A stretch of 63,805 bases of DNA, filler included, from Octopus bimaculoides (lineage: Eukaryota), in the NCBI RefSeq assembly GCF_001194135.2. It is 5 parts of 5 records of this genome, joined end to end, with 100 filler letters (N's around TTAATTAATTAA, not from the genome) between each part and the next. Parts side by side here need not be neighbours in the genome. Positions count along the whole stretch, not along the records: positions 29,461 to 51,404 come from NC_068983.1; 4 more parts are not named here. One strand, 5' to 3'. Shown piece after piece: positions 44,120-45,772 of the stretch. A program made the translations under genes and the position numbers. The notes below the pieces were generated by a model. The model searched no databases, had not been told where the DNA came from, and saw only the letters and a program-made list of their open reading frames with translations. The stretch's first letter is position 1; every line of letters starts with the position of its first letter.

Positions 44120-45772
44120 ATGCGATTCCGACGCTTCGCTAAATTTGATGCCCAACGATCGTTGCTATTAATCGTATTGGCGTATTTTTTCGCTGCTTTT
44201 GGCATGATTTTCTGGAGTGCTCTTTTGGTTCCGACGTTTAATTCGAAAACTAATTTCTTTTCAGAGAGAGATCCGTTATCTTTAAATAAACTTTTTCTAC
44301 AAGATGCATTTATTCACAAACATTCCATGCGAAATAAGACGTATTATCTATTAAAATCTAAATCTAGATCCTCATCATCATCGTCATCATCGTCATCGTC
44401 ATCTTCATCATCGTCATCATCAGCGTCATCATCATCGTCGTTAAATTCATCGCCAAATTTATCATCGTCAAAATTATCATCAAAGTTATTATCATCAAAG
44501 TTAAAATTATCATTAAACTCAGCATCATCATCATCATCATCGTCATTATCAGCATCAGCGGCATCATCATCAAACACAGACTTTCCATATTTCGCAAAAG
44601 ACTTCATTATAAAAGATCCGACGGTTTCGGGTTGGATTAAAAACCGAGCTTATTTTTGTTCAAAGAGAATTGAATGTTTCTCGAGTGAATTCGCAAAGCT
44701 AAACGATGTTTTAATTGATACAAAATTGTGCAAGGGTCATGAAGGGGGAGAAAACCTTAACACTGTGTTCAACCAATCGGAAGAAGAGGAATATCTAAGC
44801 CTCGAACCCGGTTTCTTTAAAGTAAACTGTCATTCGATATCAACGTATCAGTTTCTAAAAAGAAACCATTTGAATGATTGGTGGTCAGTGTTAAAAGGAA
44901 CATCTAGTTTCAGATATCAAAACATTTTCACTGAAACGTGTTTTACGATAGCAATTACGCGTTACGAATACGTCAATTTCTATCACACCATGACGGATTT
45001 TTACAACGCTTTCCTAATGTTGCTTATATTCAAACAACAGCCACAAAATGTCAGAATTCTTTGGATTGATGCACATCCTCAAGGTTCGCTTGATTCTATA
45101 TGGAAAAATCTTTTTGCAGGTTACACTAGGTTAAAAAGGATAAAGAGGCCTGTCATATTCCGTGAACTTGTTTGGAGTATTATGGGATATAACAGTCCGA
45201 TTATGCAAATGGACCGTGATACTTTACCGTACGTAGAAGAATTCCGCGATTTCTTCTTAAAAAGGTTCAACCAAACGGCAAACAGAGAACTCGACTGTTC
45301 AAGTTTGAACGTATTGTTTATCTGGAGAAGAGATTACATCGCACATCCGAGAAACCCCAAAGGAATTGTCTCAAGAAAAATCAGAAATGAGTTAGCCCTG
45401 TTACAACAAGCACGAAAACGTCTTTCAGGAAAACACTCTGTCAAAGGAATACAGATTGATCTTTTTACAATAGATATGCAATTAAACTGGATTATTAACA
45501 CTGACATTCTTATTGGAATGCACGGTGCAGGAATGACCCACTCATTATTTCTACCAAAACATGCGGGTGTTATTGAGTTTTTCCCTACATACTGGCCAGA
45601 TAACAATGCCCACTTCCGTTCTATATCAATGTGGAGGAAACTGAAATATCTAAAATGGCAGAACAGTGACACTAAGAACGAGTTCATTAACATGTACACA
45701 CAGATACCAACCACTGTTTTGGCCAACATGTTGGATGATATGTTGAACAGGATCTGCCCAAATATCATATGA
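44120..45772 (+). CDS. Glycosyltransferase family 61, type II membrane protein, beta-1,2-xylosyltransferase-like (550 aa, uninterrupted ORF)
   Basis: Basic N-tail and hydrophobic anchor (aa about 14-40), poly-Ser stem, then GGENLNTVFNQSEEEEY, TRYEYVNFYHTMTDFY, VLFIWRRDYIAHPR and the GT61 motif LIGMHGAGMTH. No stops over 1653 nt. Confidence 0.9.
   Translation: MRFRRFAKFDAQRSLLLIVLAYFFAAFGMIFWSALLVPTFNSKTNFFSERDPLSLNKLFLQDAFIHKHSMRNKTYYLLKSKSRSSSSSSSSSSSSSSSSSSASSSSSLNSSPNLSSSKLSSKLLSSKLKLSLNSASSSSSSSLSASAASSSNTDFPYFAKDFIIKDPTVSGWIKNRAYFCSKRIECFSSEFAKLNDVLIDTKLCKGHEGGENLNTVFNQSEEEEYLSLEPGFFKVNCHSISTYQFLKRNHLNDWWSVLKGTSSFRYQNIFTETCFTIAITRYEYVNFYHTMTDFYNAFLMLLIFKQQPQNVRILWIDAHPQGSLDSIWKNLFAGYTRLKRIKRPVIFRELVWSIMGYNSPIMQMDRDTLPYVEEFRDFFLKRFNQTANRELDCSSLNVLFIWRRDYIAHPRNPKGIVSRKIRNELALLQQARKRLSGKHSVKGIQIDLFTIDMQLNWIINTDILIGMHGAGMTHSLFLPKHAGVIEFFPTYWPDNNAHFRSISMWRKLKYLKWQNSDTKNEFINMYTQIPTTVLANMLDDMLNRICPNII

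What the first reader, a model, noticed from the sequence alone, without database searches (positions are those of the whole stretch)
44120..45772. Single-exon GT61 gene that looks like a plant-type N-glycan core beta-1,2-xylosyltransferase in a cephalopod-like genome
Seen: an intact 550-aa type II membrane ORF. Its blocks GGENLNTVFNQSEEEEYLSLEPGFFKV, TRYEYVNFYHTMTDFYNAF, ILWIDAHPQGSLDSIWKNLF, VLFIWRRDYIAHPRNPKGIVSRKIRNE and LIGMHGAGMTH line up in order with motifs I recall from Arabidopsis XYLT (GGEKLEEV..EEEELP..GAFEV; TRFEYANLFHTVTDWY; VFVDGH..LEETWTALF; VLFVRREDYLAHPRH; IGAHGAGLTH). They match the animal GT61 members EOGT and POMGNT2 less well. Established: core beta-1,2-xylose is a hallmark of plant N-glycans, is absent from vertebrates, and has been found on gastropod haemocyanins and schistosome glycans. 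Inference: this is a candidate molluscan core xylosyltransferase gene, implying an N-glycan xylosylation pathway in this animal. The intron-free CDS fits retroposition, an ancient lineage lost elsewhere, or horizontal acquisition.
Basis: partly seen in the sequence, partly recalled or inferred. Interest (0 to 1): 0.78.

Follow-up and report, generated by a model that had tools for sequence, protein, structure and literature searches.

The report
Octopus XYLT-like GT61 glycosyltransferase gene
This is a real, intact and strongly conserved octopus gene for a Golgi-type sugar-transferring enzyme whose closest characterised relative is the plant enzyme that adds xylose to protein-linked glycans, but the same gene family is already catalogued across molluscs, worms and brachiopods, and its activity in animals has not been tested.

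Summary
Window 44120-45772 (+) holds an uninterrupted 550-aa ORF for a type II membrane GT61 enzyme, on a 168-Mb chromosome of assembly GCA_001194135.2 (Octopus bimaculoides, from my memory of the accession).

- All six residues shown by mutagenesis to bind UDP or act in catalysis in EOGT are present.
- The catalytic domain is under strong purifying selection (dN/dS 0.08 against Argonauta).
- Among the groups sampled, only this family and plant core beta-1,2-xylosyltransferase share three signatures, including a 15-residue DYxAHPR loop between the two phosphate-binding arginines.
- In a quartet with EOGT and POMGNT2 it groups with plant XYLT (74%).

Limits on the interpretation:
- Identity to Arabidopsis XYLT is only 23%.
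- Uncharacterised bacterial GT61s interleave in the trees, and a direct animal-plant sister relationship gets 0.3% RELL support.
- Core xylose has not been reported in cephalopods, and the family is also present in oysters, where xylose was not detected.

The intron-less CDS is ancestral to the whole lophotrochozoan family, not an octopus event. Relatives are already auto-annotated "beta-1,2-xylosyltransferase-like", and the homology was noted in 2014. I rate this a new member of a known kind, of moderate-to-low interest.

The parts
44120..45772 (+). Complete uninterrupted CDS (550 aa plus stop) of the GT61 XYLT-like glycosyltransferase
   Evidence: ORF list; the exact protein is found on GCA_001194135.2 CM046603.1; Pfam PF04577
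44120..44161 (+). Short basic cytoplasmic tail (aa 1-14, MRFRRFAKFDAQRS)
   Evidence: 5 K/R against 1 D/E before the hydrophobic segment
44162..44230 (+). Single signal-anchor / transmembrane segment (aa ~15-37)
   Evidence: Kyte-Doolittle 19-residue maximum 2.29; the only region above 1.6; the same segment is conserved in Argonauta and P0003
44345..44578 (+). Ser-rich low-complexity stem (aa 76-153, 62% Ser) encoded by a TCN/AGC microsatellite
   Evidence: Sequence; composition; 28 aa shorter in Argonauta and relaxed constraint, omega about 0.33
44579..45769 (+). Catalytic GT-B domain (aa 154-550)
   Evidence: AlphaFold2 pLDDT 91.7, pTM 0.92; Foldseek matches only POMGNT2 significantly, E 9e-17 to 5e-14, TM about 0.55-0.61; dN/dS 0.076 against Argonauta
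44744..44794 (+). GGE-x7-[QR]xExxE block (aa 209-225), shared only with plant XYLT among the sampled groups
   Evidence: Motif table across 41 sequences; G/G/E are invariant in alignment A1
44954..45013 (+). TRYEYxNxYH block (aa 279-298) containing N286 (UDP phosphate contact) and H289 (proposed catalytic base)
   Evidence: Maps onto EOGT N245/H248, which are functionally validated in PMC13123520
45062..45103 (+). D-A-H-P block (aa 315-328); D-[AGS]-H-[PC] occurs only in the animal family and plant XYLT, and the Acidobacteriota-type proteins keep a weaker D-P-H
   Evidence: Motif table; D and H are invariant in A1
45326..45376 (+). R403...R419, the two UDP-phosphate-binding arginines, with 15 intervening residues (aa 404-418) carrying the RDYIAHPRN motif (XYLT-type insertion)
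   Evidence: Maps onto EOGT R372/R377. The intervening stretch is 15 aa in the animal family and plant XYLT, 11 aa in both bacterial groups, and 3-5 aa in EOGT, Vulcanimicrobiota and P0383. It is the only low-confidence part of the model
45479..45541 (+). Q454 and the GMHGAGMTH block ending in H474 (uridine contacts)
   Evidence: Maps onto EOGT Q412 and H432
45953..46039 (+). AT-rich block with AATAAA about 180-270 bp 3' of the stop codon; possible polyadenylation region
   Evidence: AATAAA at 45998; about 78% identical to a block downstream of the Argonauta orthologue. Its function is inferred, not shown

Best explanation
The ORF is a functional, single-copy-looking octopus gene for a Golgi-type (type II membrane) inverting GT-B glycosyltransferase of CAZy family GT61. 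It uses a UDP-sugar donor. It belongs to a large, ancient, intron-less family found throughout Lophotrochozoa (molluscs, annelids, nemerteans, brachiopods).

The most likely activity is that of its closest characterised relative, plant glycoprotein 2-beta-D-xylosyltransferase: transfer of xylose from UDP-Xyl in beta-1,2 linkage to the core beta-mannose of N-glycans already processed by GnT-I.

Shown: the intact ORF, the fold, conservation of all six UDP-binding or catalytic residues, purifying selection, the membrane topology, and three sequence signatures shared only with plant XYLT among the groups sampled, including an active-site loop.

Inferred: Golgi location, xylose as the donor sugar, and the N-glycan core as the acceptor.

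I put about 0.95 on 'active GT61 UDP-sugar transferase of the XYLT-like subgroup' and about 0.5 on the specific core beta-1,2-xylosyltransferase activity. The confidence field refers to the latter.
For: GT61 membership: Pfam, fold.

Catalytic competence: N286/H289/R403/R419/Q454/H474 correspond to EOGT N245/H248/R372/R377/Q412/H432, each validated by mutagenesis in PMC13123520.

Constraint: dN 0.094, dS 1.245, omega 0.076 in the catalytic domain against Argonauta; 83% protein identity to Argonauta and 63-64% to two other cephalopod-like proteins.

Link to XYLT:
- End-to-end collinear alignment with AtXYLT.
- phmmer bit scores to plant XYLT are about twice those to EOGT, and plant XYLT's best non-plant matches are this family.
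- The GGE...E block, D-x-H-P and the 15-residue DYxAHPR loop between the two phosphate-binding arginines are shared only with plant XYLT among the sampled groups.
- The quartet split {family+XYLT | EOGT+POMGNT2} gets 74%.
- Type II topology as in AtXYLT.

Biological plausibility:
- A beta-1,2-XylT activity needing prior GnT-I action, as in plants, was measured in the snail Lymnaea (Mulder 1995, cited in PMC8699351).
- Core xylose is common in gastropods, which carry this family.
- Schistosomes, which make core xylose, have a homologue of the same kind (PMC4122909).
- JGI's KO-based annotation names three close relatives glycoprotein 2-beta-D-xylosyltransferase.
Against: Identity to AtXYLT is only 23-26%, too low to carry over donor or acceptor specificity safely.

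With bacterial GT61s included, NJ and likelihood trees do not make the animal family sister to plant XYLT: RELL 0.003, delta-lnL -16 to -18. The best-scoring outgroup to the family is a Verrucomicrobial protein from bacterial glycan clusters (129-162 bits), which cannot be an N-glycan core xylosyltransferase.

No xylose is reported on the cephalopod N-glycans characterised so far (octopus and squid rhodopsin). Xylose was not detected in Crassostrea virginica, which has family members, or in Volvarina (PMC8699351 and PMC9300197).

No animal core XylT gene had been characterised biochemically as of the 2019 review I read (PMC6935376), the 2021 review lists only the Lymnaea enzyme activity (PMC8699351), and my searches found nothing later.

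The C-terminal (donor-binding) domain resembles EOGT and the bacterial proteins more than it resembles plant XYLT.
Confidence: 0.5

Rival explanations
1. It is an active Golgi GT61 transferase of the same subgroup but with a different specificity. It might use another UDP-sugar (for example UDP-GlcNAc, UDP-Glc or a UDP-pentose other than Xyl) or another acceptor (O-glycans, glycolipids, a different position on N-glycans, or a polysaccharide).
For: Identity to the only characterised relative is low. GT61 is known to span GlcNAc, Xyl and Ara transfer onto proteins, N-glycans and xylan (PMC13123520). The family is present, and expanded, in bivalves where core xylose was not found. No cephalopod xylose has been reported. 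The nearest-scoring relatives are bacterial enzymes in polysaccharide clusters. The donor-binding half looks more like EOGT and the bacterial proteins than like plant XYLT.
Against: The exclusive GGE block, D-x-H-P and the DYxAHPR active-site loop are kept at the same length between the animal family and plant XYLT across more than a billion years, and are lost in the bacterial groups. That argues for a retained common substrate. Snails have a plant-like XylT activity and no other candidate gene is known.
Confidence: 0.38
2. It is the cephalopod orthologue, or a divergent paralogue, of the animal ER enzymes EOGT or POMGNT2, as some UniRef automatic names for family members suggest.
For: [quoted passage not shown] EOGT is the best PDB sequence hit. 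In NJ trees with bacterial groups, EOGT attaches next to the family in 40-45% of bootstraps.
Against: EOGT scores only 46-59 bits, against 84-107 for plant XYLT. EOGT has a signal peptide and C-terminal HDEL (PMC13123520), while this protein has a signal anchor and ends in ...RICPNII. Four residues separate the two arginines in EOGT and three in POMGNT2 (R294/R298), against 15 here. POMGNT2 aligns over only about 100 C-terminal residues. The quartet test groups the family with XYLT at 74%. The proximity to EOGT is what a slow-evolving, short-branched family would show.
Confidence: 0.03
3. It is a contaminant, a recent horizontal acquisition, or a dead retrocopy in the octopus assembly.
For: The CDS has no introns. 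No neighbouring genes were called within +/-10 kb.
Against: It lies 9.7 Mb into a 168-Mb chromosome. Its GC content (about 0.36-0.37) matches its flanks. It is flanked by a SINE-like repeat shared with Argonauta. Argonauta has an intron-less orthologue. Omega is 0.076. There is no poly(A) tract downstream of the stop codon. The intron-less state is shared with Haliotis, Crassostrea and Lingula.
Confidence: 0.02

Closest known systems
[quoted passage not shown]
   Same: Type II membrane topology. Collinear catalytic domain from the GGE block to the C-terminal Cys. Conserved N, H, R, R, Q and H active-site residues. A 15-residue DYxAHPR loop between the two phosphate-binding arginines. GGE...E and D-x-H-P signatures.
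   Different: Identity is only 23-26%. The plant gene has introns (2029 bp for a 1602-bp CDS) and the animal family has none. The C-terminal donor-binding region differs (GMHGAGxTHxLFLP...WQN against GAHGAGLTHIVSA...). Trees that include bacterial GT61s do not make them sisters. The octopus protein has a long poly-Ser stem. The animal activity is unproven.
Lophotrochozoan 'beta-1,2-xylosyltransferase-like / RCN11-like' predicted proteins (e.g. Gigantopelta, Haliotis, Pomacea, Lingula) and the schistosome DUF563 candidates (Sjp_0055390, Smp_125150)
   Same: The named lophotrochozoan proteins are in the same family: 42-48% identity over the whole catalytic domain, the same motifs, and the same intron-less CDS. 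They and the schistosome proteins have been discussed as candidate animal core XylTs since 2014 (PMC4122909).
   Different: The octopus, Argonauta and two other cephalopod-like sequences form their own subgroup (63-83% identity) and carry a Ser-rich stem. The Argonauta orthologue is named only 'uncharacterized protein'. None of these proteins has been assayed. I did not retrieve the schistosome sequences, so their membership rests on the 2014 paper.
EOGT (EGF-domain O-GlcNAc transferase; PDB 9wjk) and POMGNT2 (PDB 6xfi, 7e9j)
   Same: GT61 GT-B fold. The N-R-R constellation, the catalytic His, and for EOGT also Q and H. The GMHGAGLTHxLFLP segment closely resembles EOGT.
   Different: They are ER enzymes (EOGT is soluble with HDEL) and transfer GlcNAc to protein Ser/Thr or to O-Man. 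Only 3-4 residues separate the two arginines, and there is no GGE block. Scores are 46-59 bits for EOGT and about 35 for POMGNT2.
Uncharacterised bacterial GT61 proteins (Verrucomicrobiales MAG P0375 and TARA/Logan relatives P0376-P0379; Vicinamibacteria/Acidobacteriota L010/L011)
   Same: The Verrucomicrobial group gives the highest outgroup scores to the animal family (129-162 bits) and a very similar C-terminal domain. Both bacterial groups have an enlarged (11-residue) stretch between the arginines.
   Different: No membrane anchor or stem of the eukaryotic type, no GGE block and no DYxAHPR motif. The Verrucomicrobial group has D-D-R in place of D-x-H. They are encoded in bacterial glycan-biosynthesis clusters. 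Bacteria have no eukaryote-type N-glycan core for such an enzyme to act on.

Membership tests
CAZy GT61 / Pfam PF04577 | Significant match to the family profile | tested here: met
   PF04577, 43.3 bits against a 27-bit cut-off, aa 287-485
CAZy GT61 / Pfam PF04577 | GT-B fold resembling solved GT61 structures | tested here: met
   AF2 model pLDDT 91.7; the only significant Foldseek PDB matches are POMGNT2 chains, E down to 9e-17
CAZy GT61 / Pfam PF04577 | N-R-R constellation plus the catalytic His (hallmark of active GT61 enzymes per PMC13123520) | tested here: met
   N286, R403, R419 and H289, plus Q454 and H474, align to EOGT N245/R372/R377/H248/Q412/H432
Core beta-1,2-xylosyltransferase (plant XYLT type, EC 2.4.2.38) | Type II Golgi-enzyme architecture (short tail, signal anchor, stem, lumenal catalytic domain) | tested here: met
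   Hydropathy and charge analysis. Golgi residence itself is inferred
Core beta-1,2-xylosyltransferase (plant XYLT type, EC 2.4.2.38) | Subfamily sequence signatures: the GGE...E block, D-x-H-[PC], and a 15-residue R...R loop with DYxAHPR | tested here: met
   Present in the octopus protein and the core animal family and in four plant XYLTs. Absent from EOGT and four bacterial groups; the POMGNT2 loop length comes from the literature. Plant xylan-modifying GT61s and algal XylTs were not sampled
Core beta-1,2-xylosyltransferase (plant XYLT type, EC 2.4.2.38) | Phylogenetic grouping with characterised XYLT to the exclusion of other GT61 groups | tested here: inconclusive
   The quartet with EOGT and POMGNT2 gives 74% for family+XYLT. 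With bacterial GT61s added, plant XYLT pairs with Acidobacteriota-type proteins (RELL 0.93) and a direct animal-plant sister relationship gets 0.003
Core beta-1,2-xylosyltransferase (plant XYLT type, EC 2.4.2.38) | Transfers Xyl from UDP-Xyl in beta-1,2 linkage to the core beta-Man of GnT-I-processed N-glycans | not testable with these tools
   Needs an enzyme assay. No animal member had been assayed as of the 2019 review (PMC6935376), and my later searches found none
Core beta-1,2-xylosyltransferase (plant XYLT type, EC 2.4.2.38) | The product (core-xylosylated N-glycans) is present in the organism | not testable with these tools
   The literature held here reports no xylose on cephalopod rhodopsin glycans, and I found no cephalopod report of core xylose
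EOGT | ER-luminal soluble architecture with a C-terminal HDEL/KDEL-type signal | tested here: not met
   Signal anchor; C-terminus ...DDMLNRICPNII, against HDEL in EOGT
EOGT | Closest similarity to EOGT and EOGT-type spacing of R372 and R377 (4 residues between them) | tested here: not met
   46-59 bits against 84-107 to XYLT; 15 residues between the arginines
POMGNT2 | Full-length homology to POMGNT2 | tested here: not met
   Only about 100 C-terminal residues align, even with a family profile
Recent processed retrogene | An intron-less copy of an intron-containing parent, with a poly(A) remnant, restricted to one lineage | tested here: not met
   No A-run downstream of the stop codon. The intron-less CDS is shared by Argonauta, Haliotis, Crassostrea and Lingula. 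Omega is 0.076

The most novel reading that the evidence does not exclude
The whole lophotrochozoan XYLT-like family, including this octopus gene, owes its origin to an ancient gene transfer between bacteria and the lophotrochozoan stem lineage. That would explain why every sampled member lacks introns, and why a small marine Verrucomicrobial GT61 group is its best-supported sister (RELL 0.71), while plant XYLT pairs separately with Acidobacteriota-type GT61s (RELL 0.93). Under this reading, N-glycan core xylosylation in plants and in molluscs or flatworms would rest on two separately acquired branches of one bacterial-eukaryotic enzyme clade. The direction of transfer could equally be eukaryote to bacterium, twice.
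Probability: 0.2. Interest if true: 0.65.

Novelty: new member of a known kind. Interest (0 to 1): 0.35.

Why it matters
Core beta-1,2-xylose is an immunogenic glycan epitope. It causes plant and snail cross-reactivity, and it is a schistosome antigen. In the reviews I read (2019 and 2021) and in my searches, no animal enzyme that makes it had been identified at the gene level.

This family is the obvious candidate, and the octopus copy is a clean one to test: an intact single ORF that is easy to clone from genomic DNA, with all catalytic residues present and apparently no paralogue clutter.

If it is a xylosyltransferase, cephalopods make core-xylosylated N-glycans that glycomics has so far missed, probably in a tissue- or stage-restricted way. 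If it is not, the family marks an unknown lophotrochozoan glycan modification.

The DYxAHPR loop sits between the two phosphate-binding arginines. It is a concrete place to look for what distinguishes the XYLT-type enzymes from the GlcNAc-transferring GT61 enzymes.

Tried and rejected
1. The listing of cluster members on ten divergent family representatives. Nine had no names, so the taxonomic reach beyond Lophotrochozoa could not be established.

2. A family profile against PDB, intended to extend the POMGNT2 alignment. Still only about 100 residues aligned, so POMGNT2 could be used only for C-terminal-domain trees.

3. NJ trees over all groups. Deep nodes are poorly supported. My first set of hypothesis splits mislabelled P0380 as bacterial and omitted P0382. 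I corrected this after the motif table.

4. The Logan contigs L003 and L004 as evidence of intron-less structure. They could be transcript assemblies, so I did not count them.

5. I spent the last homologue search on the Verrucomicrobial protein rather than on EOGT. I therefore did not retrieve a cephalopod EOGT or POMGNT2 orthologue to show directly that those genes exist separately.

6. tRNA scan and Rfam scan of the piece: nothing found. Pfam on the small ORFs at 46473-46754 (-) and 43673-43981 (+): nothing significant.

7. NCBIfam: only a meaningless serine-rich hit.

8. The likelihood test used my own implementation (BLOSUM62-derived rate matrix, four gamma categories, 11 taxa, 277 sites, EOGT as fixed outgroup). 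Treat it as indicative, not definitive.
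Full report
OBSERVATION

Window 44120-45772 (+) is an uninterrupted 550-aa ORF. Its product has:
- a basic 14-residue tail;
- one hydrophobic signal-anchor segment (aa ~15-37; it contains the only 19-residue windows with Kyte-Doolittle hydropathy above 1.6);
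- a 78-residue stem that is 62% serine;
- a ~400-residue catalytic domain.

Pfam assigns the protein to GT61 (PF04577, 43.3 bits against a 27-bit cut-off). I used a recalled Arabidopsis sequence only as bait, and it retrieved the genuine A. thaliana XYLT (P0121, named by NCBI and UniRef).

SOURCE AND INTEGRITY

The exact protein is encoded at about 9.73 Mb on the 168-Mb record CM046603.1 of GCA_001194135.2. GC content of the gene (0.36-0.37) matches its flanks.

The best database relative is an Argonauta hians protein (83% identity), whose CDS is also contiguous in genomic DNA. Between the two octopods only the CDS aligns (77% nucleotide identity). The flanks have diverged except for a ~90-bp SINE-like repeat present in both species.

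Nei-Gojobori estimates against Argonauta give dN 0.094, dS 1.245 and omega 0.076 for the catalytic domain, and omega about 0.3 for the tail/TM and stem. This is a functional host gene. It is not a contaminant and not a decaying retrocopy.

FAMILY

The catalytic domain finds more than 100 proteins at 42-48% identity in gastropods, bivalves, annelids (Owenia, Paralvinella), nemerteans (Tubulanus, Lineus) and a brachiopod (Lingula). An exhaustive HMMER scan of 1.84 billion cluster representatives finds 295 clusters at E<=1e-30, and all 150 best hits score at least 215 bits.

Naming is inconsistent. NCBI calls many of these proteins 'beta-1,2-xylosyltransferase(-like)/RCN11-like'. JGI's KO-based names say 'glycoprotein 2-beta-D-xylosyltransferase'. 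UniRef calls some 'EOGT'.

The CDS is intron-less in genomic DNA of Haliotis rufescens, Crassostrea virginica and Lingula anatina as well (single gap-free 100% tblastn HSPs). The Arabidopsis gene, by contrast, has introns (2029 bp for a 1602-bp CDS). The intron-free state is therefore ancestral to the lophotrochozoan family and says nothing specific about the octopus.

ACTIVE SITE

The 2026 mouse EOGT-UDP structure paper (PMC13123520) identifies N245, R372 and R377 (the 'N-R-R constellation' that contacts the UDP phosphates), H248 (equivalent to the proposed catalytic base of POMGNT2), and Q412 and H432 (uridine contacts). For R372, R377 and Q412 mutants the passages I read report abolished or lost activity, for N245 mutants markedly abolished activity, and for the H248 alanine mutant markedly reduced activity. 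I did not see an H432 mutant described.

In my alignment these residues correspond to octopus N286, R403, R419, H289, Q454 and H474. All six are conserved, as they are in the core animal family, plant XYLT and the bacterial relatives.

An AlphaFold2 model of the catalytic domain is confident (pLDDT 91.7, pTM 0.92). Its only significant PDB matches are POMGNT2 chains (E 9e-17 to 5e-14, TM about 0.55-0.61). The protein should be a competent UDP-sugar transferase.

WHAT LINKS IT TO PLANT XYLT

Among all groups I sampled, three signatures occur only in the animal family and in plant XYLT:
(i) a GGE-x7-[QR]xExxE block (aa 209-225);
(ii) D-[AGS]-H-[PC] (aa 317-320);
(iii) exactly 15 residues between the two phosphate-binding arginines, carrying [RHE][DE]Y[VIL][AS]HPR[NH].

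The same inter-arginine stretch is 4 residues in EOGT, 3 in POMGNT2 (R294/R298), 3-5 in a Vulcanimicrobiota protein and in P0383, and 11 unrelated residues in both bacterial groups. Because this loop lies between two residues that hold the UDP phosphates, it must sit at the donor/acceptor site. It is also the only low-confidence stretch of the model, which would fit a mobile active-site loop; that reading is inference.

With uniform phmmer scoring:
- the family scores 84-107 bits against plant XYLT and 27-59 against EOGT;
- plant XYLT scores 37-41 against EOGT;
- plant XYLT's best non-plant matches are this family.

In a four-group test on the C-terminal domain (the only part alignable with POMGNT2), the split {family + plant XYLT | EOGT + POMGNT2} gets 74% NJ bootstrap.

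WHAT WEAKENS THE LINK

A scan of one genome per prokaryotic species found GT61 relatives in MAGs. A Verrucomicrobiales protein scores 129-162 bits against the animal family, higher than plant XYLT does, but only 36-48 bits against plant XYLT. Vicinamibacteria and Acidobacteriota proteins score 66-78 against plants and 40-86 against the animal family.

The Verrucomicrobial group is small, about five clusters. It lies in genuine bacterial glycan-biosynthesis clusters with GT2, DegT, an epimerase, an ABC transporter and YkuD, and one member sits next to a GT17 gene.

NJ bootstraps and a likelihood comparison of all 15 group topologies, rooted on EOGT, agree:
- the best tree is ((animal family, Verrucomicrobial), (plant XYLT, Acidobacteriota-type));
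- RELL support is 0.93 for plant + Acidobacteriota-type and 0.71 for animal + Verrucomicrobial;
- a direct animal-plant sister pair gets 0.003 (delta-lnL -16 to -18).

The animal family is the shortest-branched group and is the best non-self match of nearly every other group, so plain similarity overstates its closeness to any one of them. Under the best tree, the signatures shared with plants are ancestral features that were lost in the bacterial lineages. That still argues for a retained function in animals and plants, but it is not proof of orthology. My likelihood code is home-made (BLOSUM62-derived model, 11 taxa, 277 sites), and long-branch effects are possible.

BIOLOGY FROM THE LITERATURE

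- A beta-2-Xyl-transferase activity that requires prior GnT-I action, as in plants, was measured in Lymnaea connective tissue (Mulder 1995, cited in PMC8699351).
- As of the 2019 review, only fucosyltransferase genes among the core-modifying enzymes had been identified in invertebrates. My searches found no later cloning of an animal core XylT.
- Mickum et al. [quoted passage not shown]
- The main squid rhodopsin N-glycan described in PMC8699351, a difucosylated core with galactosylated alpha-1,6-fucose, has no xylose, and octopus rhodopsin is cited only for galactosylated core fucose. I found no report of xylose on cephalopod N-glycans.
- Xylose was not detected in Crassostrea virginica plasma or haemocyte glycans and was absent or scarce in Volvarina, although oysters carry family members (P0041).

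Presence of the gene therefore does not predict detectable core xylose.

CONCLUSION

The ORF encodes an active-looking, strongly constrained, Golgi-type GT61 transferase. It belongs to an ancient, intron-less, lophotrochozoan-wide family whose closest characterised relative is plant core beta-1,2-XylT.

I put about 0.95 on 'functional GT61 UDP-sugar transferase of the XYLT-like subgroup' and about 0.5 on the specific core-xylosyltransferase activity. The main rival (about 0.38) is the same scaffold with a different donor or acceptor. EOGT/POMGNT2 orthology (about 0.03) and contamination, recent transfer or pseudogene (about 0.02) are effectively excluded.

The finding adds a cephalopod member to a candidate family that is already annotated and already discussed in the literature, so it is a new member of a known kind. 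The less expected results are:
- the family-wide absence of introns;
- the interleaving of rare bacterial GT61s with the animal and plant branches;
- the shared active-site loop.

Together these leave open an ancient inter-domain transfer (probability about 0.2).

Noticed in passing
L008:479-1786; L015:8001-9422; L016:8001-9161: A small group of marine/uncultured bacterial GT61 proteins (a Verrucomicrobiales MAG, a TARA scaffold and Logan contigs; 52-53% identical to each other) scores higher against the animal family (129-162 bits) than plant XYLT does. They sit in bacterial glycan clusters (GT2, DegT, epimerase, ABC transporter, YkuD). In L016 the neighbour is a GT17 (bisecting-GlcNAc-transferase family) gene.
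   Followed up: partly
L010:554-1930; L011:239-1639: Vicinamibacteria and Acidobacteriota GT61 proteins pair with plant core XylT in NJ (91-92%) and likelihood (RELL 0.93) trees. They keep D-P-H and an RRPYPGR version of the inter-arginine loop, and lie next to a GT25-like ORF. This could be an inter-domain relationship or long-branch attraction.
   Followed up: partly
Proteins P0353, P0358, P0363, P0365, P0325 (His->Asn) and P0347, P0359 (His->Trp): Divergent paralogues of the animal family, one from the scallop Ylistrum balloti, have replaced the proposed catalytic His (EOGT H248 equivalent) and altered the DYxAHPR motif. They may have a changed function or no activity. The octopus protein keeps the canonical residues.
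   Followed up: no
window 44345-44578 (+); antisense ORF 44344-44607 (-): The stem is encoded by a TCN/AGC serine microsatellite (62% Ser). It is 28 aa longer than in Argonauta and is absent from the more distant cephalopod-like protein P0002. The 87-aa poly-Asp ORF on the opposite strand is just its mirror image.
   Followed up: partly
window 34892-34978 and 39977-40066; L002 ~18000-18089: A ~90-bp SINE-like interspersed repeat (core ...GGCCCGAGGCTATAGTAGAAGACACTTGCCCAAGGTGCCACG...) occurs twice upstream of the gene and also near the Argonauta orthologue. ARAGORN and Rfam do not recognise it.
   Followed up: partly
window 45953-46039; L002 13999-14088: An AT-rich block containing AATAAA, about 180-270 bp after the stop codon, is about 78% identical to a block about 2.4 kb downstream of the Argonauta stop. 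It may be a conserved 3'-UTR or polyadenylation element.
   Followed up: no
L007:3553-15991 (-) and 10001-11731 (+): The Lingula family member lies entirely within the span (apparently an intron) of an opposite-strand protein-kinase gene.
   Followed up: no
window 29797-30699; 34531-34697; 36758-36767; 38948-39032; 41330-41714; 49739-50361: A long (ATC/GAT)n microsatellite produces spurious 230-286-aa poly-Ile, poly-Asp and poly-Met ORFs. Five runs of N are assembly gaps. Apart from the GT61 gene there is no credible ORF in the 22-kb piece.
   Followed up: yes
One search hit table (e.g. P0008, P0025, P0034, P0113 against P0005, P0007, P0016, P0029): Public automatic names for one and the same family conflict. 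[quoted passage not shown] The EOGT label is not supported by the analyses here.
   Followed up: yes
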